A DNA stretch of 64,000 nucleotides, from contig JAWQFM010000018.1 of assembly GCA_033442325.1 (NCBI GenBank), positions 1,175,224-1,239,223 on the forward strand, given 5' to 3'. The stretch comes from Salpingoeca rosetta (taxonomy: Eukaryota; Protista; Choanoflagellata). The position numbers and the translations under genes were made by a program. Below the pieces are notes generated by a model that saw only the letters and a program-made list of their open reading frames with translations, did not search any database and was not told the DNA's origin. Position 1 is the stretch's first letter. The number at the start of each line of letters is the position of its first letter. Shown here one piece after another: positions 1,300 to 51,135 of the stretch.

Positions 1300-1520
1300 C
1301 GACTGCAGGGGGAGTCGCAGCTCCAACCACGCGACCTTGGCAGGCTCCATCTGTGACCAGCTGCTGGTGTCCGAGACCCTCGGCGACAAGGGACACCTCT
1401 GGTGGGCTCAACCCACCTCGTGTCACGTTGCCACCAGCGCTGCTGGCACGGGGGAGAAGACATCAAACAGTGGGTGGTCATCTACCAGACATCGCTGCTG
1501 GCAGTGCTGTCACGTCAGCT

Positions 1521-29427: not shown

Positions 29428-29793
29428 TACTTGATTTTTCTTTCTTTTGCCGCGAACAATAAATTGTGCGCGTGTGTTTTCCCCCACAGAACAACCCAAA
29501 CCCAAAACGCTGCAACCGCCACTCATCGAGCCGCAGCCCACACGTCCCCCTCTCAGCATTCCACCCATCCATTGCCACCTCAACCAGTCCTTTTGTTTGC
29601 TGGCGAGTAACAACTGATCGGCGAGTGCACAAGCACAGGCAGACAAGAAGAAGGCAGGCCAGCAACCAACGGATCGCGTCTCATTCACCTCCTGATTCTT
29701 TCTCACTCCCTCTGCCCCCCTCCCCCTCCAATCTGGATGGCGTTGCATGCAAGCACGTCTGGCGTGGCCGCGCGTACGCGTGGGGCTGCGCGG

Positions 29794-30357
29794 ATGGCGC
29801 GTCTTCTTCTTCTTCTTGTGCTAAAGCTGATGATGTTGCTGGTGGTGCTGGGCGGGAACAAGGGGAACAGTGGCTTGCGCCTCCCTGCTGCGGCTGCTGC
29901 CGCTGCTGAGGGCGATCGCCCAAACGTCATCGTGTTCCTGCTGGACGATGTCGGTGCGGCGCGGTTCCCATTTTATGGGAGTGAGACAGATGTCACCCCG
30001 AACATCAACTCGCTCGCGGACAAGGCCGTTGTCTTCGATTCCTTCTTTACCCAGCCAGTGTGCGGCCCTTCTCGCGCCACGCTGCTCAGCGGGCGCTACC
30101 CTTCCAGCACGGGGGTGATCGAGAACAACTCAGACGCAGACACTTTCGCAGATGCAGACTGCACTCTTGGCTCGACCTTCCAGTCCGTCGGCTACAGCAC
30201 CGCCGTCTTCGGCAAGCTGCATGCTGCCCACACGCACGTCAACACGCTGAACTCCAGCTGCGGCTTTGACAAGTGGTCAATCTGGGCCCGCGAGGGCGCA
30301 CGTTACCACAACGCATTTGTATGTCGCACCATGTGTGTGTGTGTGTGTGTGCGTGTG

Positions 30358-30399
<42 letters not shown>

Positions 30400-31625
30400 C
30401 GCGCACGTTGATCGCTTGACACGGCGATGTGTGCATCTTTGTACCGATGTGTGCATCGTTTTACGGATGTGTGTTTCTTTGTGTCTACTGGTCTCTGAGT
30501 CCATGTGCACTTTGAGGTCCAGATCTTCACATCATCACCCGGTGGCCCCTTGATCCCCCCTCCCACAAACTCATTCGTGCGCTTGCTCGTTCACTCCACG
30601 CAATCGCACCCTTGCTGATGCATGCTGTACAGATCACGACCAACCTCGGGCACGGCGGCAACCTGACGTACGACGAGATGGTGGAGGCTGCAACAAGCGT
30701 CAACGGCACCGCAGAATCCCGCACCTTCCAAATCCAAGACGCATACTGCCCACACCTCAACCGCGAGCTGGCCAAGGCGCACATCACCGCAAGCAAGGCC
30801 GAGGGTAGGCCCTTCTTCATGTATCTGCCCATGTTGCTAGCCCACGGCCGCTTTCCCGAGCGAGATTCCGAGCCGTCTCTGCCACCGGGCATGATCCCCG
30901 CAAGCGACCCGCCGTACAGCAACCTGTTTGACCAGCGCGTGATGGTCGCCGACGCCATCATCGGCGACATCCTGCGCCACCTCACCATCGAGGGCGTGGC
31001 CAAGAACACCATCGTCGTCGTGGTTGGTGATAACGGGGCCCCTCGCAAGGTGGAGGCTGTCGTGAACGGCGTCACGGTCGAGAGCGGCAAGTTCACCGCC
31101 TACCGCAGCGCAGGCACGCGCGTGCCCTGTCTCTTCTATGACCCGCGCATTCCGGTTGCAATCCCAAAGGCCCGCCGCATCCGCGCCGTCGCGAACATGT
31201 ACGACATTCTCCCCACCCTCATGGACGCAACCAACATCGACCGCTTGCCTGCAGGCAAGAACAAGCCCAACGGCGCCAGCCTCTGGAAGTTCATCACAAA
31301 CGATCGGCGCGGGTGGGGCAAATGGACGTTCCTGTTTGGTCAGCAGCCAGCACACGCCGTCATTCGCAACCACAAGGTCATCATCTCCTCCCTGGGCGAC
31401 ATCTACTCCGAGAACAAGTGGTACACTCCCAAGCCGCTTGCACCAACTGCAGTGTGCACCAAGAAGCTGGTGCGAAAGCGCTATCAGTACATGGTAAACC
31501 ATGCCTGGAAGGCCGGTATCAACGTCACCTTGCCCGGCTCGGACACGCCGCTGGCCCCGTACTCCTGTGATGATCTCGTGTGCAACCCAGATACCAACCT
31601 TCTTGAGTGCATTACCACTAACTAG
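29794..31625 (+). CDS. Secreted formylglycine-dependent (S1) sulfatase, copy 1; 2 exons
   Basis: Signal peptide, PNVIVFLLDDVG, CGPSRATLLSGR, GKLH, GDNG and GTRVP. Intron at 30319-30632. An alternative start lies at 29737. Confidence 0.93.
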
Positions 31626-32245: not shown

Positions 32246-35200
32246 TCACTTCCTGCCCTTCAGCCGGGTCTCCAGGACAGGGAATGAGGGGCGGCGAGTC
32301 GCCTCCTGCGCCATACACATGTACGCGAGATCCCGATACCACTCGGGCGTGGGGTGTACGGCATCTATCATGCGAATACGCGGGCAAGATGTGCGTGAGT
32401 GTGCATGTTTGAAAAGGAGGACATCAGAGATGTGTGATTGCGAGCTGTCTCACGACGAACGAGGAATGACGTCAAAGTAAACACATTGACACAAACACAC
32501 ACAGACACACACACAGACACACAGACAGACAGACACACACACACACACACAGACAGACACACACACACACACACACACACAAGCGCACAGTCAACTCACC
32601 ACCCTGTTTAACATCTTCGTCCTCGTCAAACTTGAGGCGCTTGCCCTCCTCCAGCAAGCTGCTCAGCGTGGCCAGCAATGGCCCACAGTACCCGCGCCCC
32701 TTCTCCTGCAGAATCAGATCTGGGTCGCGCTGGGTCGCCACCTCCCACATGAGCACGCCAAAGCTGAACACGTCTGCCTTGGCGTTGTACTTCTTGCCCA
32801 GCAGTGCCTCTGGTGCCATGTACAGCGGCGTGCCGACAGCAGCCGTCAGGTTCATGCTGACAGACGCCACGCCAGCACCAGCGCTGTACGGGAGGTCGCC
32901 GCCCGAAAACACCTGACCATCATTCCCGCCACCATCACCATCCTCGCTGTGAGCAGCGTTGTTGCTGCGGCGTGCAGGTGCAACCAGGCGATGGTTTGGG
33001 GAGATGCCGAGGTGCTGCGTAATGGTTCCAAAGTCTGTGATCTTTGCGCGCAAGTGGCTCGATACCAGCACATTGCCTCCCTTGAGATCCCTGATGACAA
33101 TGCAGCCGGTTTGCGTGCGGTTGGTGTGTGCGCGTGAGACGAAGAACAACGGGCCAGTGACACGGTACGGCAAATGCAAACACACACACGCACACAGCGC
33201 AACACACAGCGCCACACACCACACACAGACAAACCCACACCCACACACTCATACCCACACCCACACACAGATACACAGGTATACACAGCGCAACACACAA
33301 GCCCCCCCCCCCCCACACACACATAGACAGCTACACACACCTGTGGAATTGGGCGAGGCTGTGGATAAACGCCATTCCACACGCAACGTCTTGCATCCAC
33401 TGCAGCTTGAGATCCCACACAGACGCAGCAGCGCTGTCGCCACCATCATCGCGGTCATCAACACAGCTCTCCCCACTGCCTGCAAGCGGAACAACAACAG
33501 CAGCACCGCCACGTAAGCCACTGCCCCACCCACGTCTGTGCTGCTGCACAACAGCGTCAAGGTCTGTCCGCAACAGGTCTCGGAGCGATCCCAACGCAAC
33601 AAACTCAAGCACAAGGAAAGGGCGCGCGCTGTCGTCTTTGCCGGCACCAAAGAAGCGCACGAGGTGCGGGTGGCGCGTGCGCTGGAGAAAGTCAACCTCC
33701 TTCTCAAACTCGCGCTGTGTGCCCTCGTCAAACGCAAGCGCCGTGTCCTTCATCACCTTCACGGCAACGTGCACCGTGTCCCACTCGGCCTCCCACACAT
33801 CGCCGTAGGCACCAGACGCAATGTGCCGGCGAAGATCAAGCTCGTCAAATGGAATCTCCCACGCGGCCTTGAGCGCCAGCACCTCCGCGTCCTTCTCGGA
33901 GAGCAGCTGCACGTTGAGCTCGTTCTCTGCCCGCAGCAGCCGGTGTGTGCGGTACCAGCGGTACATGAAGTACAGCGCAGCCTGCAGCAGCAGCACGCCA
34001 GCCACCGTGCCCAGCACCACGGGCACGGGGTTGAGCTGCTTCTTGACACACGTCGTGCTGGCGCTGCCAATGCGGCCCCGCGTTTCATAGCCAACCGCAC
34101 ACGCGCACGAGTGGAAGTAGGCGAGGTTGTACTCCTGCACCTCCGGGCGCCCAAGCAGCCGCGTGCGAAGGTCCGTCACCTTGAGCTGGCACACCACGGG
34201 CGCGTTTGTCAGCTGCATGATGGGGATGCTGGGGCGGCTGCGCAGCCGGATAAACTGGTTGGTGTTGAGCTCCTGCGCGCTCACAGCGACAACCTGCCGC
34301 ACAGAGCCCTCAATCACCGCCGGGCTTGACAGCCACTGGTTGTCGCTCAGGTCAAGCAGCTCCACATTGCTGAACGTCAAGCACTGCGCAAGCAGCGTCT
34401 GCGTGTGCGTGGGCGCGCGCACCTGCATGTTGTACCAGCTCCTGGCCACAACAACACGGCTGCCGAGCGAGTGGCACAGCGCGCGCGTGAGTGGCACTTG
34501 CGTGCGGCTGATATCGACAATCTGCACAGAGGGCACGGCCAGGCTGGTCAGCTCGGGGCACCCGGACACGTTGAGCTGCTGTGCCGACGCGTACAGGGTC
34601 ACGCTCTCCAGCCGTGGGTTGCCTTGCAGAAACACAACGTCAATGTCGTTGTCGCGGCACAGGTCAATGCGCGAGTACCCCGTGTTGCGCAGCCCAACGC
34701 TCTCCACCTGTGGGCTGAGGAGCTTGCACAGCTGTGGCAGCGGTACGCTTGCCTCGTCCATCCCCGGCCACCCAAGATAGAGGCCTTTCAGCTGCAGTGG
34801 TGGTGCTGCTGGTGTTGCCGCCGCCAACGCAGAAAGCAGCGCGCGCACATCGACATTTGTGATGTCGAGTTGCACCAGCGGCGCGGAGATGGCAGCCAGG
34901 GCAGCGGCGGGCGATGTGATGTGGGGATCACGCACGGTGGGCGCTGGGCTGATCTCCAGTCGCTGCAGACGCGAGAGGGCAAGCAGCGGCGCAATGTCGA
35001 GCGCACTGATGGCGTTGTTGTTGAAGTAGAGGGAGCGAAGCGTAGGCAGGCCTGTCACGTCAAGCATCTGCGTGATGGGGTTGCTGTTGAGGCGGAGGGA
35101 GGTGATGGAGGGGAGATGCACACCGCGCGGGAACACCGTCAACCGGTTGTGTGCAATTGACAGGTGCTGCAGGTTTGGCAGGTCAGCCAAAAACGCGCAG

Positions 35201-36685
35201 CCACCGCCGCGAAGTTGCTGTTGCTGCTGCTGCTGCATTTGCATTTGCTGTTGCTGTTGGGGTGCCGTTGTGGGACCTGCTGCTGCTGTTGCTGTGACTT
35301 CGAAGGCGGTTGGCGGGAGGGAGGCAATCTGGTTGTGGCTGAGGTCCAGGATGCGAAGGAGGGTGTGGTTCTGCACCAGGCACGGCGGTACAGCAGTGAT
35401 GCTGTTCTGCTGCACGCTGAGATTCTCCAACACGGGCATCGCCTGCAGTAGCGATGGCGGCAGGGATGTGATGCTGTTCTCGAGCACAAGGAGGTCGCGG
35501 AGGTGCGGAGCATATCCGCCAAACCAGTCCATCGACAGCTGCGTCAGCGCATTGTCCTGTAGGGAGAGCACACTCAGGCGCGTGAGGGCAGCAAAGGTGT
35601 TGGGCGGGATGTGGGACAGGCGGTTGTGCCTGAGATAGAGCTCCTGCAGGTTGGGTGTGGAGCTGAAGAGCCCGGGCGGAAGGTGGGTGATGAGGGTGAA
35701 GGTAAGGGTAAACCAGCGAAGGCGAATCTGGTCGGCAAGCAGCGTTGCAGGCAGCGATGTCACGACGCTGACGCCGAGGTCCAGGTGGACGAGCCGGGAG
35801 AGGCCACGGAAGAGGTTGGGGTGCAAGGTGGACACGTCGTTCCTGCTCAAATTAAGGAAGAGGAGGGACGTGAGCGGGGCAAAGGCCGTGTTGTCGATGG
35901 AGTGGATGTGGTTGTGGGCGAGATCCAGCACGCGCAGATTCCCGAGCGCAGCGAAGGTGGCGTTGGGGATGGTGGTGAGCTGGTTGCTGTGCAGGACAAG
36001 GCGGTCCAGGGAAGTCATGTTGCTAAAAGTGGTGTCGTGGAGTTGGCGCACGCGCGTGTTTGTCACGCTGATGCGCTCAATCTGGCCGGCGAGCACGAAC
36101 GGGAGGTGGCGTGCTGCATATGTGTCGCTGTACATGCTGCTACGCTGCGCCGTGTTGTTGGTAAAGGCTGAAATATTGGTGAAGGCAAGTGAGGACATGA
36201 TGTCTTCGCCTTCATCGTCTGTGGGCGCAGGCGACAGCCCAAAGACCACGGTGCTGGTGTTGGCAATGTCGATGCGCGTGAGCGTGCTCAGCGGGTTGAG
36301 CATGTTCAGGAAGAAGAATGGCGACACGAGGCTTCGCAGCTGCACAGAGGTGATGCCGGCCCATGCCGAGCCACCCGTGGTGAGCACAAACTCGAGGTCG
36401 CCCGTGTGCACCTTGCCGGAGATTCTGAGGAGCGACGGCTGCACGGTTGACACGAGGGCGCTGATCCACGCCGTTACGTTGGCTGTGGACACGGGTTGCA
36501 AGGAAGGCAGCAGGGGCGTGTCATCGTCCACGGCATCGAACCACAGCACGAGTGTGCTGCTCTGTTGCACCAAGGTTCCTGTGGCATCTGTGGTTGTGCA
36601 GTTCCCAGCAACCAGAGCGGATACAAAGCACGTGATGCTGCCGCGATTGTTCTCCTGAGCAGCAAGTAAGGCACGTCGACCACGG

Positions 36686-36743
<58 letters not shown>

Positions 36744-37197
36744 GATGATGATGTTGATGATGATGATGATGGGAGAGCGCTATGGCTGCTGGCTCTGCCG
36801 ATGCAGTCTGACCAGTAGCCACAGCTTTCAACCGGCTCAAACCGGCCCCAGCAAGTGCGGCGGTGCTGCTGGTAAGGGTGGCTGCTTTATCTTGGGCATG
36901 CTGGCCACACATGGCCTGAAGCATGGCGTGTAATGGAGCAAGCTCGTCCTGCGCGGTTGGCGCTGCAAGGCGTCGGAGGGCTTCCTGTGCATCTGCGCAA
37001 AGCCTGCGGTGTGCGGGGCAGCCCACGCCAATGTGGTGCGTTGCATCGTGCAATGTGCACAGCAGCAGCGGTGGTGTCGTGTTTGATACAACATGGGCTC
37101 CAGCACCAGTCTCAGACACCAGCGTCACAACCGCCAAGACAAAAGGAACAACCACTGCAGCAGCCAAACGCCAACGTGCCACTCCCACTACAGCCAT
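32246..37197 (-). CDS. LRR receptor kinase (signal peptide, ~20 LRRs, TM helix, TKL-type kinase); 3 exons
   Basis: LxxLxLxxNxL repeats; TM VVLGTVAGVLLLQAALYFMY; kinase motifs ASGAYGDV, VAVK, HR/DLKGGN, DFG, GTPLYMAPE and DVFSFG. The last exon DAVHPTPEWYRDLAYMCMAQEATRRPSF...GRK* ends at 32246. Confidence 0.92.
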
Positions 37198-37719: not shown

Positions 37720-40700
37720 ATGGCTCTGTTTGGTGGCGCCAGCCAGGGTGCTGGGCGCACTGCGCTGTGCAACGGTGACTTTGTGTCGCTGTTTGTGGAG
37801 GAGCTCAAGGGCTTCGCCAGCGTGGACATTCTGTCGACGCGTGAGGTCACCGTGTACCAGGGCGACACGGACTCCGCGTTTGATGGCAGCACAAGCACCA
37901 AGTCATCCTCGGAGACCACGACCGCGCCCAACTTTGAGCAGTCGTGCGTCTTCCAGATCAAGGCGGTCACCGATCTGCCAGAGGGCGCCAGCCTCAAGTA
38001 CGGTGATGTCGTGCGCATCATCCACCGCAGCACCCAGCGCAGCATGACGCGCCAGAACCGCGCCGTCAACGGCAAGCACGCCGTGGCGCTGGAGAACACG
38101 GACCGTGCCGCCGCGCACTTCCGCCTCCTCCCGCGCTTCAAGATCCGCTCCGTCGGCGAGCCCGTGCTGCTCAACGACCAGGTCATCTTCCAGAACGAGG
38201 TGGTCATCGAGGGCAACCGCACGTACCTGAATGACGAACCGGCCAAGAGAACTCGCCCAAGTTCCTCATGGAAGTGCGCTCAAGCAAGAACCACNNNNNN
38301 NNNNNNNNNNNNNNNNNNNNNNNNNNNNNNNNNNNNNNNNNNNNNNNNNNNNNNNNNNNNNNNNNNNNNNNNNNNNNNNNNNNNNNNNNNNNNNNNNNNN
38401 NNNNNNNNNNNNNNNNNNNNNNNNNNNNNNNNNNNNNNNNNNNNNNNNNNNNNNNNNNNNNNNNNNNNNNNNNNNNNNNNNNNNNNNNNNNNNNNNNNNN
38501 NNNNNCACGTTTGCGCAGACGGTGCTCGTTGCCACGCACGACGAGGACGCCTTCTCGCTGCAGTCCGTGCACCAGCAGGACATTCGCGACTTCTACTACG
38601 CGCTCGGCCACGTCAAGGTGCTCACGCGCCTGGCAGCAGACGACGTGCTGACAGACGTCACCAACCCCGTGCACGCGGACCTGTACAAGCGCGCGCGCCG
38701 CAGCATCCACGCGCTCATCCAGTTCTGCTCGGAGGACAAGATTGAGGATGATGAGGACGTGGTGGGCCGCGCCAACACCCTGCACCAGAACATCCTCTTT
38801 GACCTGCAGGTGCAGGTGCCGCTCATGAAGGTGGTCAGCCTCCCCTTCCACGGCGCACACTGCGCAGAGTGGGGCAAGGGGTGGCGGGAGCGCCTGACAC
38901 AGACAGAGTACCGCCACTACAACAAGCTCGCCCGCGACGTGTACCGCCTCATCAGCTACCTGTGCCGGGAGAACGTGCACATTGGGCTCATGTTTGCCAA
39001 CGCGCACCTGACGGCCATGATCAACCAGTGCCGGCTGATTGGGTACCTGGACGGCATCAACTGGGACATTGCCGACGCCATTGACGAGATGTTCAAGGAC
39101 AACACCATCCTGCTCAACCGCGTCACGAAGCAGTCGATTGAGACATACCTCTCCCTCATCCACGAGGCGCACACCACCACCGCCCTCGAGCAGTACTTGC
39201 GCCTCCTCGCAGCCCTGTGCTCTGTCGACGGTGAGGCCATCACCTCCACCCAAGCCAGCATCCGCGACCTCATGCTTGTTCCTGGCGCGCCGTCAGCGGA
39301 CGTTCTGCCCTCCATCGCCAACGGTCCCAGCGGCATGCGCATCACCGCGCGTGTGCTCACCCCTGGCAAGCCCTTCCGCGCATGGAGCACCGTGACCCTC
39401 CCCCTGCAGGAGTACCTGAAGGACCACGACAACCTCGAGTACTTTGACGCCACGCTGGAGCTGTTTGCGCAGCTGTGCCTGGAGGGCAACTGCCAGGGCG
39501 AGCTGCGTGCGGCGGCCCGCACGCCGTTCCCCATGATCATGGGCGCCCTCAAGTCGCAGCTGCCGCCGCACGTCAAGGCGCGCTTCTGCACGCTCCTCGT
39601 CAACCTGTACATTGACGGCGATGACCTGCCCGACGTGGACCACTCCAACCGGCGCTGGCAGGACCTGGCCAACCACAAGTCGCACGCAAAGCTCAAGACT
39701 GCGGCGGTGCAGCTGTTTGACGTGGACGAGGTGGTGAACTGGGTGGAGGCGTACCTGTCGCAGAACGGCCTGCTCACCTACAACCACGAGTACCACAGCG
39801 CAGCCAACGGCAAGAAGCCCGAGATGATCGCCCTCAAGCAGGACGAGCTGCACCGCAACATGCTCACGGAGCAGGTGGTGCACGTTGCGCTTGCCCTGGT
39901 GAACAAGGGCCTGTACTGGGACGCCGGCAGCAGGAAGCGGCTGGTGCGGCTGCTGCTCACGCTGCTCGTGCGCACGCACCCGGGCGAGAACGATGACCTG
40001 AGCGCAACATCGTCGCTGGACGTGGTCATGCAGGCCAAGACGCTGGTGTGCCGCGCCCTCGGCGCGTGCATGGACGCGAACCTGGACGAGGTGGTGACGG
40101 AGCTGCTCACGGCGTTCAAGAAGGAGTATTTGGCGCACAAGCACAAGCACATTGAGGCGCACGCGGACGACCGCGCCCTGCACGAGGTCAGCCTCATCCA
40201 GCACAACGGCGACCACCGCCACTTCTTCGAGACCGACGGCCTGTCACAGCAGCAGATTGTGCACCTGCTGCTGGCGCTGACAACCTACCCGAGCGACGGG
40301 CTGCGGGTCGCGGCGCTCAATCTCCTGCTGCGCTGCTTCAACGTCAAGGGCTCCGTGCTGGCCCGCCTGTCGGATGTCGTCGTCATTGCAGACAGCAAGG
40401 ACGAGGCTGCCCTGGAGAAGCTGGAGCAGCTGCTGCTGACGCTCAAGCACGAGGACCACGACGACCTGCACACTGCGGCCGCGCACATGACGGAAGAGAT
40501 TGAGTGGATGTGCTCGCAGTGCATCACCGTCAACGGCACGCTGGCAGCCGACCTGCTGGCCCCCGGGGACAGCAGCAGCAGTAAGGCGGGGAGGAGGAAG
40601 CGGAAGGGCGTGAGCGGCCCACGTCTGCCGTGGCGCAAGCCCGGTGTGAGTATTGAGCCGCACCACGCGCACCAGGAGATGATGCGCAACGCCAACGCAC

Positions 40701-43700
40701 ACAAGGCCGTACTGCACATCCTTCACCACCACCTCTCTGGCGCCGACCTCAAGACGGCGCTCAAGGACGACCGAGCGCGGGACTTGTTTGCCGCGTGTTT
40801 TGAATTCCTCGCCTTCTTCTGCCTGCACAACAAGCACAACCAGGAGCTGCTTGGGCACGCGCACGACATCTCGTTCTTCGTGCACGCGTGCTCGTACGGC
40901 ATCCACGCAGAGAAGGTGCTGCACCGTATTCTGGAGGGTGAGCCCGACCTGGTGCGGGAGCACGTGGTGGACGAAGGCAAGGTGGACCGCCTCATTGCAG
41001 ACCTGATCAAGGAGCCGCGCTGTCGCAACGTCGACTTCCTCAAGCTGATGGAGGTGATTGTTGCGCCCACGGGCACGCCCTCGCGGGAGCTACAGGACCT
41101 GGTGGGCGAACATTTCCTGCAGGCAGAGGAGAAGAGCCATCTCTTTGAGCACGAGCTTGGTTCCTCCCACTTCATCTCGTTCATCGTGTCCACTTACACC
41201 AAGACCGGTGGCCGTGGCGACGAAGACGACGATGATGGCAGCACCAACGCCAACACCAGCGCGCAGGCGCTCTCCGCCCGCGAGCACGATCTCCGCGATT
41301 TCTTTGAGCAGCTGCTGTCATTCTATGCGGTGACAGCGCACGGGAACCAGGGCACCGCAGCCCATGTTGCCAAGCACGCACCGCTCGCTGAACTTGCACA
41401 GCCCTTCATTGACGGCGTCACACTCCCAACCGCCACAAAGGTGCTTATGTGTGTGTATTTCGTGTATTTCGTGTGTGTGTGTGTTTGTGGTGAGGATTTG
41501 TGTCTTATGTGTGTGTGTGTGTATGTCGTGTGTATTTCGTGTGCATCTGTGATCGTGTGTAGCTGTGATAATGCCCTGTTCTGAAATGTTACAGCTCCGT
41601 TCATGTTCACTTTGACACTGTGTGCTCGCCGTGTTTCATTCTTGCATGTGTATGCCTTCACTCTCAGACTCACATTTCTTTCCTTCCACACACACGCACG
41701 CACAAATGCACATGCATGCACAAATACACATACACACATACACACATACACGCACGCACGCACAAATACACATGCACACACACCGCCAGTCTCGCCTGCT
41801 GACGCTGATCCGAGATGTGTACCTGCTGCACGGCACGGACGAGGATGGCGATGGTGTTGTCGACGATGTTGATGCGGAGGACTTTGGATTTGGGTCGGCC
41901 GCAGCCAAGCAGGAGACGTGCGTGAGACTCTGTGGACCCCTGGCCAACGAGCTGCGGGCCATCGACAAGGGGTGGAAGCACAAGCCGAGCAAGGTCCGGG
42001 CAGCGCTCGACCGGTATGCGTTTATGACGCTGCTGCCGCTCGCTGCTGACCTGCTGCGCATCTTCGTGGAAGAGCACGGCAGCGTGCCGGCGGAGAGGCT
42101 TGAGGAAGAGGCTGTGTCGCTTGTTGCGGAGTGCGTGCGCTTCCTGAAGCACCGGCGAAAGGCAACATATGAGAGCCCGCACTACCTGATGGACCACGAG
42201 TACCGCGTGCTGGGTGGACATGTCACTGGCGAGCTGCTCAACAGCACGCTGCTGGCACAGCAGGACGCGACGCTGGTGAATGTGCAGACGGAGCACACGT
42301 GGTACGACGAGACGGAGGCGAAGGAGGCGCGAACGGCAGCAGCACGCTCCACCGCGCTCAGCATGGGCAGCAAGCACGGGTCGAGCAAGCGGCACGCGTT
42401 CTCAATCGACTCGTTTGCAGCCACGCACAGCAAGCGCGGCGGTGGCGGGCACACCCGCGGCGGTGGCAAAGCGCCACGCAAGGTGATGCCTGTGGAGAAG
42501 GTGAAGACAGAAGGCGAGCGCATCCAAGAGGAGCTGCCTTTCTTCGTTGATCAAGTGCGAGAGACATTCAACCACGGCTTCTCGCAGCCGCACCTGCCGT
42601 GGATGTCGTTTCTCTCCACGGAGTACAACTTTCAGCCGTTCTGGTCGCTGGTGGGTATTCTGCAGGCTGACTTGCTGGAGGACAGGCTGCACGAGGAAGA
42701 GAAGGAGGCCGAGGAGGCGGCACAGGGCGGTGGCGGCGGCGGTGTGAGTCATCAGGCGTCATCTGTGTCACGGAAGGGATCAAAACTGTGGCGAAGGAAG
42801 CAGGGCGCCGCCGGCATCACGCCCCAGGACACGAGCAAAGGTGATGGCGCACCCCCCTCGCCCTCGCGAACACGCGTGTCGCGCACATGGACGGCGCGCT
42901 CTGCCCGTTTCCAATTTCGCAAGCAAGTGCGCGTGCACCCCAAGTCCCCCAAGATGGAATCGTTTGACCTGAGTGCACAGCAGCTGGACGTGGACATCCG
43001 CTCGTGTGTCTCTCACATCATCAGCCATTTTGAGGTGTCTGACGAATACGATCATGACCACCGCATGCACCAGGACTTTGAGGAAGAGGAGGAGGACAAC
43101 GTGATTGTGGGCTTCCTCGCAGCCATGTCGTGTGCGCTGACGTGTGTCGTTGATTCCAAGATGGGTCGCGTGTACCAGGAGCTTGACGATGAGGACAACG
43201 AGGAAGCCAAAGCAGCCCACGAGGCTGCCATTGCCACCGTTGGGCGCTCCCTCAACAGCCTTGGTCTCCCCGACATGGTCCTGTCTCTGCTTGCGTCTCG
43301 CCACCGGTGCACGGTGCTCATGGCGGCGCAGCTTGGCTGGCTCATGCTGGATGCCACGCCGCACGTGTTTGAGGCAAAGGCCGCGGCTGCGCTGATGGAG
43401 AGCAGCGTTGAGGGCGGCAGCACGCTCGCCCGCCGGCAGCACCAGCAGCAGCAGGAGCGGCTGCTGTCGCAGTGGGCGTTCCACGATGCCTTTGAGAGCG
43501 GACCAATGGGCCGGCGCGCCCTTGCCGCCATCCAGCGCCACCTGCAGCACATGCAGGAGCTGCTGTTCAAGCGGGAGCACGAGGACCCGCTTGACCGGCT
43601 GCGTCGCGACCAGGACGTGGAGAACCTCGACGTCGCCATCGCCATCCGCATCCTCGGATTCCTGGAGGCGCTGTGCTTTGGGTGCTTCACGGAGATGCAG

Positions 43701-46305
43701 CAGCTGCTGCGGCGGCAGGAGAGCGGGCAGCGCGTGGACATTGTTGTGTGCGTGGTTGAGTTGTCGCGGTCGCTGGACCAGCTGTTCCGCAACAAGGCGC
43801 ACCACGGGTTTGACGTGGAGGAGGTGGAGCGGCTGGACGCCATCAAGGAGATTTACAACGAGCTGCAGCGCACGGTGAACGACGTGATGTTTCTGCAGCA
43901 GCTGTTCAGCACTCTCGGCGCCTTCGTTGGCGGTCCAAACGTCGACAACCAACGCGCGCTTCTCGAGCACAAGGTGTGGTGCACGGGCGTGTCGGCGTGT
44001 TGGTGTTGGTGTGGGTGTGGGATGAGAGTGTACGCGTTTGCGGTTTTGATTGTGTGTGTGTGTGCGTGTGCGTACTTATGTCCATGTGTGTGTGTATCGC
44101 ATATCCGTCAAGCTCCATCCACATGTGCTTGTTTTTTGTGCGTCGGTCGTTATGCACACAAAAGTGCCCCTCTTATCAATCACCCCACCCACCCCCGCCC
44201 CCCCCCCCACCAACACACCTCTCACCCCTGTCAACAATTTCAGGTGCACGAGCCGATTCTGCTGTTCCTGCGCTATCTGAACGCGTCGGACGACAGCGAG
44301 GACATTCCAGACAAGGATGTGTTCCACTCGCTCACGCTGTATGTGCTTGAGGCGGCTGCATCCCTGAGCATCTGGTGCGAGTCGTACGGCGTGGTGGACA
44401 ACGGGCACGGCGACTGGGTGCAGCAGGACGGCTACGATGTGGATGTGGACACAGAGCACATGCATGCGCTCGTGAAGAGCTTTGACCTGTGCAACGCGCT
44501 GGATGTGATTGACGAGTGCTGCGAGGCATCCATCCTCTTCCTCCTGCTCGGCGTGCTCGAGGGCCGGCGGGAGGGCGACGTGGTGCTGGACATGCTGTGC
44601 GCTGCGTTGTTCCCGGAGCCGTACCTTACCCGCGACGCGCACTTCACCCAGAGCGCGTTCTTCCGCCTCCTTGACGAGCACTCTGCTGCCGCGGAGAGCG
44701 ACACCAACATGCACGTGCGAGAGGCGGCCCTGCAGCGCGTGGCGGCGTCACCACACACGGCGCACTTCTTCGACCACGACGTTGCGCTGCTGTACTACAC
44801 GGTGCTGCGGATTCTTGGCGAGCAGGCTGAGAACTACTGCATTCGCGTGACGCACTTGCTCAACACGTGGGAGCAGCACTCCCCGCACAGCCACAACGCA
44901 CGCGACAGCGTTGGCCGGATTGAGCTGCTGCGTGATGGCGAGCTGCAGCCCGTGTACTTCCAGGTGCCCGCTGTTGTGCACGACACGAAGGACAAGCTGC
45001 AGGTGCGACAGCTGCGCACGCAGATGATCAATGGCACGGTGCTGGAGAACCCGGAGCAGAAGATGCAGTCGTTCTTTGGCAGCGTCGACTTTCTCATGAA
45101 CGTGATGAACTTTGAGGCGCGCGTGGCCCGCATGGGGGTGTCGTATGTGCTTGGCCACCAGCGGTTTCTGCTGCCATTGGCGTTTATCCTCGCCGCCATC
45201 ATCAACATCTGGGTCATCTTTGACCTGGGCGACGATGGGTTCCCGCACAGCGTTGTGCGGGTGCTGGCGATTGCGCATGCTGTTGTCAGCATGCTGATTC
45301 TGCTTGGGCAGTCGCTGTCCCCGCTGTACGTTGACTGGCAGCGGTGGCANNNNNNNNNNNNNNNNNNNNNNNNNNNNNNNNNNNNNNNNNNNNNNNNNNN
45401 NNNNNNNNNNNNNNNNNNNNNNNNNNNNNNNNNNNNNNNNNNNNNNNNNTACTACGTGGTGTACCTGCCATGAGCGTGCCGGCATCTCCAGTCAGCTGTC
45501 TGCTCCACCTGTTTGACCTGGTGCTGCGGTGAGTGATGACCTCGTGCTACGCGCCGTCAAGCAGAACGTCTCCAAACTCCTGGGCACCTTCCTGCTCACC
45601 TTCTTCATCATCTACGCGTTTATGCTTGTGGGCCGCGATGCGTTTGGTGGCACGTACGAGTTTGCGGACGCCCCGGCCACGTGTGCGCCGGGCACGCCAC
45701 TGGTGCAGTGCCTGCGCGACCATCTGTACTACGGCTTCTACTCGTCGCCCGTGTTTGCGCCCGCGGATGCGGATGTGGGCCTGTTTGTGTACTCGCTGCT
45801 GTACTTTATGGTGGTGGTGCTGGTGATGGCCGCGATTGTTTCCGGTATCATCATTGACTCGTTTGGCGAGTACCGTGCCGAGACGGAGGCCATCGCTGCG
45901 GAGAAGGAGAGCCGGTGCTTTGTGTGCAACTTCAGCCACGACCGCATCCAGGCTGCGCACAAGGGCGGCTTTGAGGCGCACATTGCGAGCGACCACAACG
46001 TGTGGAACTACATCTGGTTCCTCATGCGCGTGCTGGAGAAGCGAGAGGAGCACAAGCCGCTGACGGGCGTGGAGATTGAGGCTGTGCGGCACTGGGACAC
46101 CAGCAAGGACCTGACGGCAATGATGCCCGTGAACCGTGCGCTGTGCCTCGAGGCGGGGAGCGAGGACACCACCCTGGACCAAGTCCTGGACGTGGTGAAG
46201 CAGGTGGCCATGGCGACGGGGCAGGTGGTGATGACGTCCGACCGGTCCCTCCAGCTCCTGCTCTCCCTCACGCAGCAGCACAGCGCCAACACCAACAAGC
46301 CCTAA
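37720..46305 (+). CDS. Divergent IP3-receptor / ryanodine-receptor-family channel (~2600+ aa); 2 introns, 2 gaps
   Basis: N-terminal beta-trefoil motifs (LCNGDFVSLF, PNFEQSCVFQI, LKYGDVVRIIH, FKIRSVGEPVLLNDQV); RIH-associated ILGFLEALCFG...MQQLLRRQ; GRIELLRDGELQPVYF; TM6/zinc finger GIIIDSFGEYR...CFVC...FEAHIASDHNVWNYIWF. Introns at 41441-41789 and 43974-44243. Confidence 0.93.
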
Positions 46306-46916
46306 CTCGCCGCATGTGTGTGTATGTACGTGTGCATGTAATGTATGCATGCATGTGTGTGTTTTTTTTGGGGGGGGGGGATCCTCCATGGTTTCTGCCT
46401 GCTTGGATCATCTGGTTTCTATTTTATGTTTCAGTTTTCCCTTGACACCTGCTGTCTAGCTGTCTAGCTGTAGCTTTCTCCTAATTGTATTGTCTTTGTG
46501 TATGAAGTAGGCTGAGTTTTTTTGACTGCGCGTTTTGACTGCTGTTGTATTGGTTTCCTTCTGCCGTATCTTGCGTTGACACTGTTTTGGACAGCCGCTG
46601 AAAGCATTGCAGCCAAGCGCTGAACATTGTGAAACCTGTTGATGGTGTGTTTGCTTGCATGCGACGTGTTTTATGTTTTATGCAGCACATACAGTCGTTT
46701 ATGGGAAGCAATTCAAGAATTTGGCGCATCATAGATCCCAGCAGGCATGGGTACAAAGGGACGTGTGCATGGAGACACCAAGATGCGAGGAAGTAGTCGC
46801 AGACATCGGCACACGGAAGCACAGGGACGCGGATACAGAACCGCGGACGGACGCACACATGCACACACACGTGCGCTCACAAATAACACGTATACAACAC
46901 TCCCAACCTCCCAACG

Positions 46917-48131
46917 TTATCTTGGGATGGTGTTTCGTAAGAGAGCAGCAAGATCGTCCGGTAGAAGCGTGCGGATGAGGTGAATCTGGAACGTCTTGTA
47001 GTAGAAAAACGCACATGCGCAGAGGTGGTGCGTGTGCGCCGTGGCTTGTTGGATGAAGGTGCTTGCTGAGACCTGCATTGGCTTTGGGCAGGCTGTGAAG
47101 TGGGCAAGGTAGATGTGGTCGCACAGCAACGCCAGCGCCTCAATCTCAGCATCAAACTGGCAGTTGTAGAGGGCGCGAGGAAGCTCTTGTGCCTTGTCGC
47201 GGAACACGTGACGGACGAAGTAGGTGAGAAAGCCCTGGAGCGTGGCAGCGCCGTGGGTGCGACCATGCTGGAGCCCCGTACGGTACCAGCCTGTTTCGGG
47301 GCGGAAAGCGCGGGGCGCGGTGATGAGCGCCTGCATCTGCTTGAAGATGCTCATGCTGGGCTGGATGAGCTGGAAGCCGCCGTTGACGCTGCTGAACATG
47401 CCGTTGGTGAAGAGGAGGTGGGACGGCAACACGAACAGGTGGTCGATGTTGTTCATGACGAGCATGTCCACGTCCAAGATGAGCACGCGATCGTATTCCT
47501 CAAATGACCAGGGCCACAGAAAGTCAAAGTCCATCAGGCCGATGCCGGCATATTGGCCACCAGGCTGGACGAGGCGCTTGTACTCTGGGTCCTGGACGGC
47601 CTCGAGCGGAATGGCTGGGCGGCGGTGGCGGATGGTGATGTTGCATGCAGCCGCAAGGGCGAGCGTCTGCGGGCCAGGGTTGCGGGTGATGAGAAGATAA
47701 TCGACGTTGTGGAAGTTGGTGTTGCGGTGGAAGCTTTGGAACAGCACGCATGCGGGCCACGCGTACTTGAGCACAGCCGCATCGTCGTCGTTGTTGTTTC
47801 TGTTGCTGCTGCTGTTGTTGCTGTGTGATGAGGAGGATGGCTGGGCCTGAGGCGGCTGTTCTCTTGTTGTTGCAAGCGTGTCACGTGGTGTATCCAGCGG
47901 TGGCATTGCCACAGTGGTCACTGCAATCCGCATCGACCGCAACTGTTCTTGTGTTGGCTCATGTTGTTGTGCGTGTGCGGAGCTGAGCGTGATGGTCGTC
48001 GTGGATAACACGAGCAACACCAGCGAGAAGATGCCGGCCGACGCCAACCAACGACGAGCCAAGGTGCTGCCACCCCCACCACCACCACCACACCAACGAC
48101 AACAACACAGACACCTGGCACGCCACATCAT
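46917..48131 (-). CDS. Glycosyltransferase family 8 (glycogenin/GUX-like), type II membrane; apparently single exon
   Basis: N-terminal TM, W..EEYDRVLILDVDMLVMNNIDHLF (DxD), VNGGFQLIQPS, QGFL, YNCQ and HFT..PKP. Confidence 0.88.
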   Translation of the reverse strand: MMWRARCLCCCRWCGGGGGGGSTLARRWLASAGIFSLVLLVLSTTTITLSSAHAQQHEPTQEQLRSMRIAVTTVAMPPLDTPRDTLATTREQPPQAQPSSSSHSNNSSSNRNNNDDDAAVLKYAWPACVLFQSFHRNTNFHNVDYLLITRNPGPQTLALAAACNITIRHRRPAIPLEAVQDPEYKRLVQPGGQYAGIGLMDFDFLWPWSFEEYDRVLILDVDMLVMNNIDHLFVLPSHLLFTNGMFSSVNGGFQLIQPSMSIFKQMQALITAPRAFRPETGWYRTGLQHGRTHGAATLQGFLTYFVRHVFRDKAQELPRALYNCQFDAEIEALALLCDHIYLAHFTACPKPMQVSASTFIQQATAHTHHLCACAFFYYKTFQIHLIRTLLPDDLAALLRNTIPR

Positions 48132-49336
48132 GATAGGTGCTGACCCACCACCACGACACTCGTGTTGATTGATGTGTGTTGTGCCCAAACACGCAAGCAA
48201 GCAAGCAAGCAAGTGATGCCAGATCACGCCCCGCAAACGGGATTTCACCCCGCAAACGGGTCATTTCAGAAATAGGCACAAGCAAGAAGCGATGCATTTT
48301 GCTACATTTTGTGATGTTGTTTACAAAACCTGACTTGGGTTGGCTGCCTCGACGATGATGGCGGTGGCGATGAAGAGCGATGACACGGTGGGTGGATGCA
48401 TACATGCAAAGGCTGGCCGTTGCAGTGGGGCGCTGTCCGTTGCACGCGCAACACACGAGTGTCCATTGTAACGGAGAACAACGACGGACAGCAACACGAG
48501 CGAGGACTTGAGGTGAGGCAGGTGCTGTTGCTGGATGGATGTCGTTGTGCACTGTGTGCTGGGGACAGCAGTCATCAGCACACACACACACACACATCAG
48601 CACACAACGACAAGCGGCAACCACAACAACCTCCTTCATCTATCATTCACTCACATCAGTCAATGCATACCACCACAACACTCACGAGCACACGCGCTAC
48701 CAGTACACACACAGAACCACACCCGCCATACAGTGTGTTGATGTGAGACCTGACAAAACCGTTACACAAACACACCACCACCGCACGACTGCGACTGCGA
48801 TTGTTGCTGGCTGGTGCCTCTTGTGGTTGACGTTTGTCCTCCGTCCGTTTGTCCTCCGTCCGTTTGTCCTCCGTCCGTTGTCAGTTTTGCCGCACCCCGA
48901 CTCACCACCACCACCACCACCACCACCACCACCACCACCACCACCACCACCACCACCACCACCACCACCACCAACACACCACCTCATCCGTGTGCTGAAC
49001 ACCCTCGACACACCACCACACCACGACACTCAACACGTTGTCGTTGTCATTTATTTTACGTTTACTGCTCTGACCAACCCAACAAACAAACCAACCCCAC
49101 AATTCCGTCCCCAACAGCCAGCACCCACCCATTGACCCCAACTTGGCTGAGCAGCCAAGCTTGTGAGGACGCCCTTGTGAACCCCACCACTCCCTGACAC
49201 ACGACGCCAGCGAGCGCCACACCCGATTTCGTTCCACGTGACAAGTGGACCCAAAGAGAAGAGCAGAACACCAGCACAGCGCACACGCCCCCCCGCTCTC
49301 ACTCACTCACACACGACGGCACGTATCCTCGCTACG

Positions 49337-50070
49337 ATGATGACGACGTCCAGAGCACCTGCCTTTGCTGCAGCCATTGCGCTGCTCATGTGCTGCTGCT
49401 GCTCCTGCTGTTGGATGAGTGGCGCGCAGGCTGAGCCAGCTCAGCCCAACATCCTCATTCTGCTGTTGGACGACGTGGGCGCGGACCGGTTCACGTTTTA
49501 CGGATCCAACGTGGACTCCTCCGCCAACATCAACGAGCTCGCGGAGAAGGCGGTGGTGTTTGATGCCTTCTTTGCGCAGCCCATCTGCGGGCCATCCCGG
49601 GCGTGCTTGCTGAGCGGTCGCCTGACATCCAACACCAAGGCATACGGCAATGGCCACAAGCGCAACGAGGACTTTGATGAGTCTGAGTGCACGCTTGGCG
49701 CGACGTTCCAGGAGGCCGGGTACAGGACAGCCCTGTTTGGCAAGGCGCACGCCTCCGCACCATACCTGTCCACATACAACGAGAGTTGTGGGTTTGGCAA
49801 GTATGCCATCTGGGCGCGCCAGGGACCTCGCTACCACAATTCAACGGTCAGTATGCGCGTCTGTGTGTCTGTTGAAATGTGTGCGTGCGCGCGCGTCTCT
49901 GTGTTTGTGCGTACGTGCGCGTCTCTGTGTATGTGTCTGTGCATGTACACGCTTCAACCATCACTGACTCCGACTCACGCAGATACAACTCCCCCCCCCA
50001 AAAAAAACAACAACACCCCCCTTCCCAAACCGCGTCTCACCTCTCTTACACACACACACACACACACATA

Positions 50071-50135
<65 letters not shown>

Positions 50136-51135
50136 CACCCTCAACTATTGGCAGATCCAAACGAACATTGGAACGGGCGACCTGTCTGAGTTTGATGCGC
50201 TTGTTGCGGCGGCAAGGGAGGTGGAGAACGTGGGCCCGTCCCGCACGCTTGACATGAAGAACACATACCACCCGCACCTCAACCGCGAGCTGGCCAAGGC
50301 GCACATCACCGCAAGCAAGGCCGAGGGCAAGCCGTTCCTCATCCACATGCCGATGCTGCTGACGCACGGCCCGACGCCGGACAAGGAAGACGACCCCTCG
50401 CTGCCGTTGGACATGCACACGGAGCAAGGCGGCAACGAGCTGTTCAACCAGCGGCTCATGGTTGCGGACGCCGTGATTGGAGACATCCTGCGGCACCTAG
50501 AGGTGGAGGGCATGCAGAACGACACAATTGTGCTCGTGACGGGCGACAATGGCACGCCGCGCGGATATGACGCCGTTGTCAATGGTGTCAAGACACGCAA
50601 CGGCAAGCGCCACGCCGACCGGGCAGAGGGCACGCGCGTGCCGCTGCTGGTATACTACCCACCTGTGTTAGACACGGCGCCGCGGACGGTCAAGTCTGTG
50701 GCGACGCTGTATGACATTCTGCCAACGCTTGTGGACGCAGCGGGCGTGAGCGGATATCCGGCCGGCAAGGACGAGCCCGATGGCAGCTCGTTCTGGCCGC
50801 TTGTGACGGGGCAGCGGAAGAAGACGGGGGAGTGGGCGTACCTGTTCTCGGAGTCGCGGGACCCGCACGCCGTTGTTCGCAACCGCAAGACCATCATTGC
50901 CTCCGATGGCAACGTGTACAGAGAGCGCAAGTGGTATGACCCCGTGCGGGTGAGCCCGGAGTTGGTGTGCCAGCGCAAGAAGATTTTCCGCCGCATGAAG
51001 CGCATGGTGTTTGAGGCGTGGAAGCTGGACATCAACGTCACCCTCCCTGGCTCGGACACAGCGCTGCCGCCAGACTCATGCGCAAAGATTGTCTGCAATC
51101 CCGACACCAGCCTTCCAGAGTGCGTCTACGCTTAG
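49337..51135 (+). CDS. Secreted S1 sulfatase, copy 2 (paralog of 29794-31625); 2 exons
   Basis: Signal peptide, PNILILLLDDVG, CGPSRACLLSGR, GKAH, GDNG and GTRVP. Intron 49847-50154 sits at the same position as in copy 1. Confidence 0.93.

What the first reader, a model, noticed from the sequence alone, without database searches (positions are those of the whole stretch)
45680..45880. IP3R/RyR-like channel lacks the GGGxGD selectivity filter
Seen: between TM5 and TM6 the protein reads CLRDHLYYGFYSSPVFAPADADVG. Established: canonical ITPRs have GLRxGGGVGD here and RyRs have GVRAGGGIGD. TM6 reads AAIVSGIIIDSFGEYR, with Ser where ITPRs have the gate Phe (LIFGVIIDTF), while the CxxC...H...H zinc finger is intact. 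The frame is open and continuous through this region. Inference: a channel with altered ion selectivity, or a non-conducting / regulatory subunit, possibly representing an undescribed IP3R-like subfamily.
Basis: partly seen in the sequence, partly recalled or inferred. Interest (0 to 1): 0.78.

Follow-up and report, generated by a model that had tools for sequence, protein, structure and literature searches.

The report
Choanoflagellate IP3R/RyR-like channel, alternative pore loop
This Salpingoeca rosetta gene encodes a large relative of calcium-release channels that really lacks the classic GGGxGD ion filter. It carries instead a different, strongly conserved pore loop shared with related channels in many protist groups, so it looks like a distinct, untested channel type and not a broken gene.

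Summary
Window 45709-45780 encodes CLRDHLYYGFYSSPVFAPADADVG where RyR has GGGIGD, and 45829-45876 encodes AAIVSGIIIDSFGEYR. The CxxC...H...H zinc finger is intact. Contigs from four public runs show the same sequence.

The organism is Salpingoeca rosetta. NCBI names the gene 'cardiac ryanodine receptor', which is a misnomer: about 2,640 aa, IP3R-like domains, no SPRY or RyR repeats.

The genome holds four paralogs with this loop, alongside canonical GGGVGD and GGGLGE channels. S. kvevrii, S. urceolata and Mylnosiga have orthologs. The loop fits a consensus, H-L-[DY]-Y-G-[FL]-[RY]-x-x-P-[VI]-[WF], found across CRuMs, Rhodelphis, dinoflagellates, Paulinella and others.

With the loop columns removed, a tree still separates these proteins from all GGG-type IP3R-A, IP3R-B and RyR sequences (98/95). 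The S6 gate, the hinge and the fold are retained. The IP3-binding basic residues and both Ca2+-activation glutamates are replaced.

The frame is not continuous upstream. An N gap (45350-45449) is followed by 11 one-base deletions (45450-45545). These are assembly errors, since reads restore the frame, and the NCBI model wrongly splices them out.

Best reading: a functional endomembrane channel with a non-canonical filter and an unknown trigger. The scan had already reached this conclusion on paralogs elsewhere in this genome.

The parts
37720..46305 (+). Whole gene, IP3R/RyR-superfamily channel (NCBI model P0002, 'cardiac ryanodine receptor [Salpingoeca rosetta]'). The true product is about 2,640 aa, judged from the C1 paralog P0001.
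   Evidence: Pfam on exon pieces finds Ins145_P3_rec, RYDR_ITPR (RIH), RIH_assoc and a weak Ion_trans. tblastn of P0002 maps to 37720-38208, 38516-41473, ~41766-43976, ~44205-45326 and 45535-46302.
38295..38505 (.). Assembly gap (211 N) inside the N-terminal beta-trefoil region. The NCBI model treats it as an intron.
   Evidence: N runs are listed. The C1 paralog is open and continuous across the equivalent stretch (L011 ORF of 1433 aa).
43602..43976 (+). RIH_assoc region that holds the cytosolic Ca2+-activation site in IP3R and RyR. Both coordinating Glu positions are substituted here: LC-F-GCF and LG-A-FVGGPN.
   Evidence: Pfam RIH_assoc, E 7e-11. The profile alignment with IP3R, RyR and protist homologs is, and the paralogs. 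The role of hIP3R1 E1938 and E2002 comes from PMC9522344.
45350..45449 (.). Assembly gap (100 N) inside the transmembrane domain. Together with the bad bases that follow, it covers helices S3-S4.
   Evidence: Read contigs bridge 45349 to 45504 with 140 letters, equal to the intact C1 paralog.
45450..45545 (+). Low-quality assembly end with 11 one-base deletions, each collapsing a doubled base. They create false stops (TGA at 45472) and frame shifts.
   Evidence: blastn against the C1 paralog shows 11 gaps here and none elsewhere in about 1,730 aligned bases. All four runs insert G, G, G, A behind 45527, 45530, 45532 and 45538. No run holds more than 0.85 of the stretch's 31-mers.
45568..45645 (+). 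Transmembrane helix S5
   Evidence: AF2 model of the C1 paralog's TM domain: helix 167-192, pLDDT 93, mapped by an offset of 153 residues.
45700..45735 (+). Pore helix (LVQCLRDHLYYG)
   Evidence: AF2 helix 211-222. It aligns with the RyR and IP3R pore helix.
45736..45777 (+). Substitute filter loop, FYSSPVFAPADADV, in place of (R)AGGGIGDEIEDPAGDE. It has no Gly triplet and is shorter than the RyR loop.
   Evidence: In 51 no-GGG homologs, G is present in 51/51, P in 49/51 and W/F in 46/51. Column entropy is 0-1.5 against a median of 2.39.
45775..45912 (+). Pore-lining helix S6 with its cytosolic extension. It carries Ser 45841-45843 (the IP3R1 Phe / RyR1 Gln position), the Gly hinge, the Ile constriction 45853-45855, the Asp ring, and FGE.R.
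   Evidence: AF2 helix 236-281. G.IIID.F...R is invariant or nearly so across 51 sequences.
45916..45996 (+). C-terminal C2H2 zinc finger (CFVC ... H ... H)
   Evidence: C283, C286, H304 and H309 are invariant or nearly invariant in 51 homologs. They align to the RyR zinc finger.

Best explanation
The gene is real, intact and under selective constraint. It belongs to an old branch of the IP3R/RyR superfamily in which the GGGxGD filter is replaced by a different conserved pore loop, H-L-[DY]-Y-G-[FL]-[RY]-x-x-P-[VI]-[WF]; here it reads HLYYGFYSSPVF.

The protein most likely assembles as a tetrameric six-helix channel in an internal membrane. It would open and close through the usual S6 bundle (Gly hinge, Ile constriction, Asp ring), coupled to the cytosolic domains through the zinc-finger C-terminal domain. 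Ions would pass a non-canonical filter built from the Ser/Ser/Pro/Val/Phe segment, with acidic residues (ADAD) at the luminal mouth. Permeation should therefore differ from IP3R and RyR.

It is probably not opened by IP3, and in S. rosetta probably not through the canonical Ca2+-activation site. Its trigger is unknown.

Shown here: sequence, intactness, constraint, clade, fold, and the loss of ligand-site residues. Inferred: tetramer formation, conduction, cation preference and location.
For: - **Superfamily domains:** Pfam Ins145_P3_rec, RIH and RIH_assoc.
- **Fold:** AF2 model of the TM domain (C1 paralog, identical in the pore loop) has pLDDT 93.2. Its best Foldseek matches are RyR1/2/3 and IP3R1/3 TM domains, TMq 0.60-0.68, E about 1e-12.
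- **Sequence is real:** four runs from four studies show the filter region unchanged and restore the frame beside the gap. X1, X3 and X4 carry the copy-specific G at 45660, and an X1 contig runs into the copy-specific 3' end.
- **Constraint:** dN/dS against the C1 copy is 0.14, from 15 synonymous and 7 non-synonymous changes.
- **Same loop in paralogs:** four S. rosetta paralogs carry it, while canonical GGGVGD (C20) and GGGLGE (C12, C3) genes sit in the same genome.
- **Orthologs:** complete transcriptome ORFs in S. kvevrii and S. urceolata, and a 318-aa Mylnosiga ORF holding the channel domain.
- **Wider clade:** about a third of the best 150 hits (of 3,832) share the loop type, from Diphylleia, Rigifila, Rhodelphis, Polarella, Symbiodinium, Oxyrrhis, Paulinella, Platysulcus and Muranothrix.
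- **Tree:** with the loop columns dropped, no-GGG separates from GGG-type at UFboot 98 / SH-aLRT 95.
- **Loop conservation:** G 51/51, P 49/51 and aromatic 46/51, as conserved as the S6 GIIID.F motif.
- **IP3 site:** the positions of IP3R1 R504, R506, K508, R511, R568 and K569 are T, H, N, F, H and I.
- **Ca2+ site:** the two Glu positions are F and A, and D and A in the C10 and C34 paralogs. E-to-A at hIP3R1 E2002 cripples activation (PMC9522344).
Against: - There is no functional, localisation or permeation evidence for any member of this clade.
- Only a monomer was modelled, so which loop atoms line the pore is not known.
- The acidic residue that directly follows the canonical filter (the D of GGGxGD) is absent, so conduction or cation preference could be poor or lost.
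- Transcription in S. rosetta is not shown. The runs are only guessed to be RNA. It is suggested indirectly, because the X1 contig does not break at sites where the paralogs differ.
- Capsaspora IP3R-B, another IP3-insensitive relative, gave no Ca2+ release when expressed. This comes from my memory of the Alzayady 2015 abstract; the paper is not held. Silent relatives may therefore exist.
Confidence: 0.6

Rival explanations
1. The protein is a non-conducting or regulatory subunit or scaffold. It keeps the IP3R/RyR architecture but no longer passes ions. It would act alone as a tether or sensor, or co-assemble with the canonical S. rosetta IP3R-A or IP3R-B subunits to modulate them.
For: The Gly triplet and the filter Asp are gone. 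The IP3 and Ca2+ activation residues are replaced. Canonical-filter paralogs exist in the same genome and could carry the conduction.
Against: The substitute loop and the S6 gate, hinge and Asp ring are among the most conserved columns across 51 homologs from many supergroups, which is hard to explain without a pore function. Identity to GGG-type TM domains is only 22-26%, so co-assembly is unlikely. Several lineages hold multiple copies of this type on their own branch.
Confidence: 0.22
2. The gene is a divergent true ryanodine receptor, as NCBI names it, or a direct sister of RyR whose filter decayed secondarily in choanoflagellates.
For: The C-terminal piece scores slightly better against RyR than against ITPR in PDB (2e-19 against 6e-17). 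S6 reads FGE.R as in RyR. The AU test does not reject RyR plus the choanoflagellate clade (p 0.243).
Against: No SPRY, RyR-repeat or RR_TM4-6 domains are found (the fish RyR P0004 has them). The length is about 2,640 aa, not about 5,000. The N-terminal 700 aa hit only IP3Rs in PDB, with no RyR hit. The best tree places RyR inside the GGG-type side (98/95) and places this gene with no-GGG proteins of distant protists. The loop is a shared conserved motif, not decay.
Confidence: 0.1
3. The gene is a pseudogene or an assembly artefact. On this reading the odd loop and the frame breaks reflect a decaying duplicate or mis-assembled sequence.
For: A stop and frame shifts lie at 45450-45545, and there are two N gaps inside the gene. 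A 96-99% identical copy exists on another scaffold.
Against: All 11 deletions collapse doubled bases, and all lie within 96 bases of the gap. Contigs of four runs restore them and bridge the gap with the same length as the intact paralog. dN/dS is 0.14. The loop is identical in the intact C1 copy and conserved in other genera.
Confidence: 0.03

Closest known systems
Inositol 1,4,5-trisphosphate receptors (ITPR1-3; the IP3R-A lineage, including the S. rosetta gene on contig C20)
   Same: Length of about 2,600 aa and the same domain order (Ins145_P3_rec/MIR, RIH, RIH_assoc, six-TM channel, C2H2 zinc finger). The N-terminal 700 aa hit only IP3Rs in PDB. The TM fold matches IP3R1 and IP3R3.
   Different: There is no GGGVGD. 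Ser replaces the S6 Phe. The IP3-coordinating basic residues of ARM1 are replaced, and so are the Ca2+-activation Glu residues. The gene lies on the other side of the 98/95 split.
Ryanodine receptors (RyR1-3)
   Same: The best sequence and fold matches for the channel domain. S6 is RyR-like (G.IID.FGE.R). The zinc finger and the TG.E motif of the C-terminal domain are kept.
   Different: Half the size, with no SPRY or RyR repeats. There is no GGGIGD and no acidic DE pair after the filter, and the luminal loop is shorter. The gene is not placed with RyR in the best tree, although the AU test cannot exclude that placement.
IP3R-B lineage (Capsaspora CAOG_04510 = P0096, mollusc 'ITPR2-like' P0010, S. 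rosetta genes on C12 and C3)
   Same: These are IP3R-like relatives found in unicellular holozoans alongside IP3R-A, and are reported not to bind IP3 (Alzayady 2015, from memory; the paper is not held). Some members also lack the Gly triplet (P0096 GLENGLASVGIAD, P0010 YGLIGDLFE).
   Different: IP3R-B forms its own clade (100/99) inside the GGG-type side. Its S6 reads IGLNV.FGIIVDTFSELRDEK, and most members keep GGGLGE. The window gene is not in that clade.
Paramecium Ca2+-release channels with aberrant pore motifs (CRC-V, CRC-VI; Ladenburger and Plattner 2011, PMC3213138)
   Same: These are IP3R/RyR-like channels of a protist in which the filter motif is a variant or unrecognisable and the loop to TM6 is shortened. 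The proteins are expressed and sit on specific organelles, and their permeation is untested.
   Different: Whether any Paramecium CRC carries the G-x-x-x-P-[VI]-[WF] loop or belongs to the same clade was not tested here. The published description does not define this motif.

Membership tests
IP3R/RyR superfamily | RIH and RIH_assoc domains and an N-terminal Ins145_P3_rec/MIR region | tested here: met
   Pfam: PF08709 3e-7, PF01365 1e-31, PF08454 7e-11. The precomputed domains of ortholog P0003 add PF02815.
IP3R/RyR superfamily | C-terminal six-TM channel fold with pore helix, S6 G.IID.F motif and C2H2 zinc finger | tested here: met
   AF2 pLDDT 93. Foldseek to RyR and IP3R TM domains gives E about 1e-12. 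D263, R269, C283, C286 and H304 are invariant, and H309 is nearly invariant.
IP3R/RyR superfamily | GGG[VI]GD selectivity filter | tested here: not met
   The loop reads GFYSSPVFAPADAD, and reads confirm it.
IP3 receptor (IP3R-A) | Basic IP3-coordinating residues (IP3R1 R265, R269, R504, K508, R511, R568, K569) | tested here: not met
   The phmmer alignment to IP3R1 structures keeps the R265, T266 and R269 positions. R504, R506, K508, R511, R568 and K569 become T, H, N, F, H and I (on the C1 paralog; the window has the same ANTLHQNILF segment). Residue roles are from established knowledge.
IP3 receptor (IP3R-A) | Placement in the IP3R-A clade | tested here: not met
   IP3R-A, including S. rosetta C20, forms its own group (68/93). 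The window gene is on the other side of a 98/95 branch.
Ryanodine receptor | SPRY domains, RyR repeats, RR_TM4-6, size of about 5,000 aa | tested here: not met
   None of these domains is found in the five exon pieces or in the precomputed domains of P0001 and P0003. The fish RyR P0004 has PF02026, PF00622 and PF06459. The length is about 2,640 aa.
Ryanodine receptor | Placement with RyR in a tree | tested here: inconclusive
   The best tree puts RyR within the GGG-type side. Forcing RyR together with the choanoflagellate clade costs 12 lnL units, p-AU 0.243.
IP3R/RyR with canonical Ca2+ activation | Two Glu residues in the RIH_assoc region (hIP3R1 E1938 and E2002) | tested here: not met
   The window has F and A. 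C10 and C34 have D and A. S. kvevrii has D and E. Protist no-GGG members keep E and E. Function of these residues: PMC9522344.
No-GGG 'G-x-x-x-P-[VI]-[WF]' clade (unnamed) | Pore loop H-L-[DY]-Y-G-[FL]-[RY]-x-x-P-[VI]-[WF] directly after the pore helix, with a short link to S6 | tested here: met
   HLYYGFYSSPVF. Column counts are and the alignment.
No-GGG 'G-x-x-x-P-[VI]-[WF]' clade (unnamed) | Grouping with other members when the loop itself is left out | tested here: met
   A quick tree of 137 rows gives 99 SH-aLRT. A careful tree of 66 rows gives 98/95, and one change of state suffices.
Paramecium CRC-V/VI type channels | Same clade or same loop motif | not tested
   Only the paper's text was read.

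The most novel reading that the evidence does not exclude
The G-x-x-x-P-[VI]-[WF] channels are a third, ancient, eukaryote-wide branch of the IP3R/RyR superfamily. They would have their own selectivity filter and hence their own permeation properties. In choanoflagellates they would also have an activation mechanism independent of both IP3 and the canonical Ca2+ site. That would make them an unrecognised class of intracellular ion channel in the closest relatives of animals.
Probability: 0.35. Interest if true: 0.75.

Novelty: new variant of a known kind. Interest (0 to 1): 0.55.

Why it matters
IP3Rs and RyRs are treated as defined by the GGGxGD filter. This gene belongs to a conserved, widely distributed sister type with a different loop, and that type sits next to canonical IP3R-like genes in the sister group of animals.

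- It gives a natural experiment on what the filter does in this fold.
- It points to intracellular channels with unknown ions and triggers in many protists.
- It corrects the idea that choanoflagellates have 'ryanodine receptors'.
- S. rosetta is genetically tractable, so knock-out, tagging and heterologous recording could test it directly.
- The public gene model is wrong at two assembly gaps and lacks helices S3-S4.

Tried and rejected
- **Alzayady et al. 2015** (Mol Biol Evol), the paper most likely to have classified these genes, is not held. One guessed PMC id was a different paper. What I say about IP3R-B function is therefore from memory.
- **Other papers** on choanoflagellates and RyR do not mention this loop.
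- **Central region against PDB:** phmmer of 42990-43988 found nothing. A first MAFFT attempt to find the Ca2+ site used the wrong sequence windows and failed. An iterated profile then worked.
- **Tree runs:** one run returned no answer. The search had finished and was recovered.
- **RyR sisterhood:** the AU test was inconclusive.
- **Pore geometry:** model coordinates are not exposed to scripts and only single chains can be folded. Pore radius and which loop atoms face the axis could not be examined.
- **Full-length protein:** Exons were used one at a time by reference. The long open stretches of the C1 and C10 paralogs and database proteins served as proxies.
- **Rejected readings:** pseudogene and sequencing artefact.
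Full report
**What is in the sequence**

The window is contig C18 (1175224-1239223) of a 55.4-Mb eukaryotic genome. Database hits identify it as Salpingoeca rosetta.

A gene runs on the + strand from 37720 to 46305. Pfam finds four domains on separate exon pieces:
- Ins145_P3_rec (37720-38289)
- RIH (38504-41500)
- RIH_assoc (41790-43988)
- a weak Ion_trans match (45529-46302)

- CLRDHLYYGFYSSPVFAPADADVG at 45709-45780
- AAIVSGIIIDSFGEYR at 45829-45876
- CFVC...H...H at 45916-45996

phmmer against PDB aligns this ORF with RyR2/RyR1 (2e-19) and ITPR2 (6e-17), and opens a gap exactly at GGGIG. MAFFT puts YGFYSSPVFAP opposite VGVRAGGGIGD, with a shorter link to S6.

**Is the gene intact?**

The frame is not continuous upstream of 45529. 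A 100-N gap (45350-45449) is followed by a stop and frame shifts.

Against the 96-99% identical paralog on contig C1, the 96 bases after the gap carry 11 one-base deletions. Each collapses a doubled base. The other roughly 1,730 aligned bases have none.

No public run holds more than 0.85 of the 31-mers of 45451-46450. Contigs of four runs from four studies all do two things:
- They bridge 45349 to 45504 with 140 letters, the same length as in the intact paralog.
- They insert G, G, G, A behind 45527, 45530, 45532 and 45538.

Three of the runs carry the copy-specific G at 45660. One contig continues without any difference into the copy-specific 3' end, so these contigs describe this locus.

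The breaks are therefore assembly errors. The NCBI model (P0002, 2,479 aa) treats both N gaps as introns and lacks helices S3-S4. The true product should be about 2,640 aa, like P0001.

dN/dS between this copy and C1 is 0.14, from 15 synonymous and 7 non-synonymous changes.

**Paralogs and relatives**

The genome holds four genes with this loop, on C18, C1, C10 and C34. It also holds canonical genes with GGGVGD (C20) and GGGLGE (C12, C3).

A profile of the channel domain found 3,832 relatives among 1.84 billion representatives. About a third of the best 150 lack GGGxGD and share one loop type.

Its consensus over 51 sequences is H-L-D-Y-G-F-R-[SG]-[AP]-P-V-W:
- G 51/51, P 49/51, W/F 46/51
- column entropy 0-1.5 against a median of 2.39, as tight as the S6 GIIID.F motif

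Named members come from:
- choanoflagellates: S. kvevrii and S. urceolata (complete transcriptome ORFs) and Mylnosiga (a 318-aa ORF with the channel domain)
- CRuMs: Diphylleia, Rigifila
- Rhodelphis
- dinoflagellates: Polarella, Symbiodinium, Oxyrrhis
- Paulinella, Platysulcus and Muranothrix

**Tree**

The loop columns were removed so that the trait could not drive the result. A 137-row quick tree splits no-GGG from GGG-type sequences at 99. A careful 66-row tree (251 columns, LG+C20) does so at UFboot 98 / SH-aLRT 95, and needs only one change of state.

The GGG side holds vertebrate ITPRs with S. rosetta C20 (IP3R-A), the IP3R-B clade (Capsaspora CAOG_04510, a mollusc protein, S. rosetta C12 and C3; 100/99), and RyR (100/100).

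Support for the window gene's groupings:

| Grouping | Support |
|---|---|
| with C1 | 100/97 |
| with all four S. rosetta paralogs | 100/100 |
| with S. kvevrii, S. urceolata and four unnamed metagenome proteins whose loop reads TFGER | 99/91 |

An AU test does not reject RyR plus this clade (p 0.243), so RyR sisterhood is unlikely but not excluded on these data.

**Structure and functional sites**

An AF2 model of the C1 paralog's TM domain (51-sequence alignment) has pLDDT 93.2. It shows S1-S6, a pore helix (window 45700-45735), a short loop, a long S6 and the zinc-finger C-terminal domain. Foldseek's best matches are RyR1/2/3 and IP3R1/3 TM domains, TMq 0.60-0.68.

The N-terminal 700 aa match only IP3Rs in PDB. 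The R265, T266 and R269 positions are kept, but R504, R506, K508, R511, R568 and K569 are T, H, N, F, H and I. IP3 binding is therefore unlikely.

The two Glu residues of the Ca2+-activation site (hIP3R1 E1938 and E2002; PMC9522344) differ between lineages:

| Sequence | First Glu position | Second Glu position |
|---|---|---|
| Window gene | F | A |
| C10 and C34 paralogs | D | A |
| S. kvevrii ortholog | D | E |
| Protist members of the clade | E | E |

**Interpretation**

The loop is a conserved alternative, not decay. Together with the retained gate, hinge, zinc finger and fold, this favours a working tetrameric channel with a different filter and an unknown trigger (confidence about 0.6).

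A non-conducting or regulatory role remains possible (about 0.2). A true-RyR reading is weak (about 0.1). Pseudogene or artefact is essentially excluded.

**Literature**

- Reviews cite Mackrill 2012 for 'RyR-like structures' in choanoflagellates (PMC5715910).
- A later alignment paper that includes S. rosetta does not mention the missing filter (PMC7399828).
- Ladenburger and Plattner 2011 report Paramecium CRCs whose filter is variant or unrecognisable and whose loop is shortened, with permeation untested (PMC3213138).
- Alzayady 2015 could not be read.

Two earlier notes of this scan (s1-444827, s1-440349) reached the same conclusion on other pieces of this genome, presumably the paralogs. 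I reached mine before reading them, and I tested their claims here.

**Limits**

Exons were used one by one by reference, with paralog ORFs and database proteins as proxies.
- Transcription in S. rosetta is not shown, because the run kinds are guesses.
- No tetramer model or pore geometry could be made.

Noticed in passing
window 37720-46305; P0002: The public gene model named 'cardiac ryanodine receptor' treats two assembly gaps (38295-38505 and 45350-45449, plus the bad bases up to 45534) as introns. It loses about 160 residues, including helices S3-S4.
   Followed up: yes
L002 (G000:C1:330981-334691) against window 44290-46210: The C1 paralog is 97-99% identical at the DNA level over the last exon, but has a different C-terminal tail and 3' flank. 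This points to a very recent duplication or to gene conversion. In the DNA run X13, depth is about twice as high over the shared part as over the copy-specific 3' end.
   Followed up: partly
P0096 (Capsaspora CAOG_04510) and P0010 (mollusc 'ITPR2-like'): Two members of the IP3R-B clade also lack the Gly triplet (GLENGLASVGIAD; YGLIGDLFE), although their clade mates keep GGGLGE. The canonical filter seems to have been lost independently there.
   Followed up: partly
L013 (metagenome contig, gene at 1001-3616): A no-GGG channel-domain protein (P0029, 871 aa) lies directly downstream, on the same strand, of a called gene of 4,834 residues with a weak SPRY hit. Together they may form one giant SPRY-bearing channel of this clade.
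   Followed up: no
window 33331-37197 (-), with further ORFs at 32472-33418 (-): A long ORF with a signal-like N-terminus, polyQ runs, many leucine-rich repeats, a TM segment and a protein-kinase start (GAYGDVWEAEW...VAVKVMK). It looks like a receptor kinase lying head-to-head with the channel gene.
   Followed up: no
window 29737-31625 (+) and 49238-51135 (+): Two similar sulfatase-like genes (LLLDDVGA..F..CGPSRA motif) flank the region on the same strand, each split by a CA/GT-repeat intron. An ORF at 46917-48248 (-) looks like a glycosyltransferase.
   Followed up: no
window 41500-41790, 43980-44290 and many other places: Introns and intergenic DNA are full of CA/GT microsatellites. In ORF lists these read as long CVCVCV or THTHTH 'proteins' and sometimes stay open in frame with the exons, as in ORF 41622-45473.
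   Followed up: no
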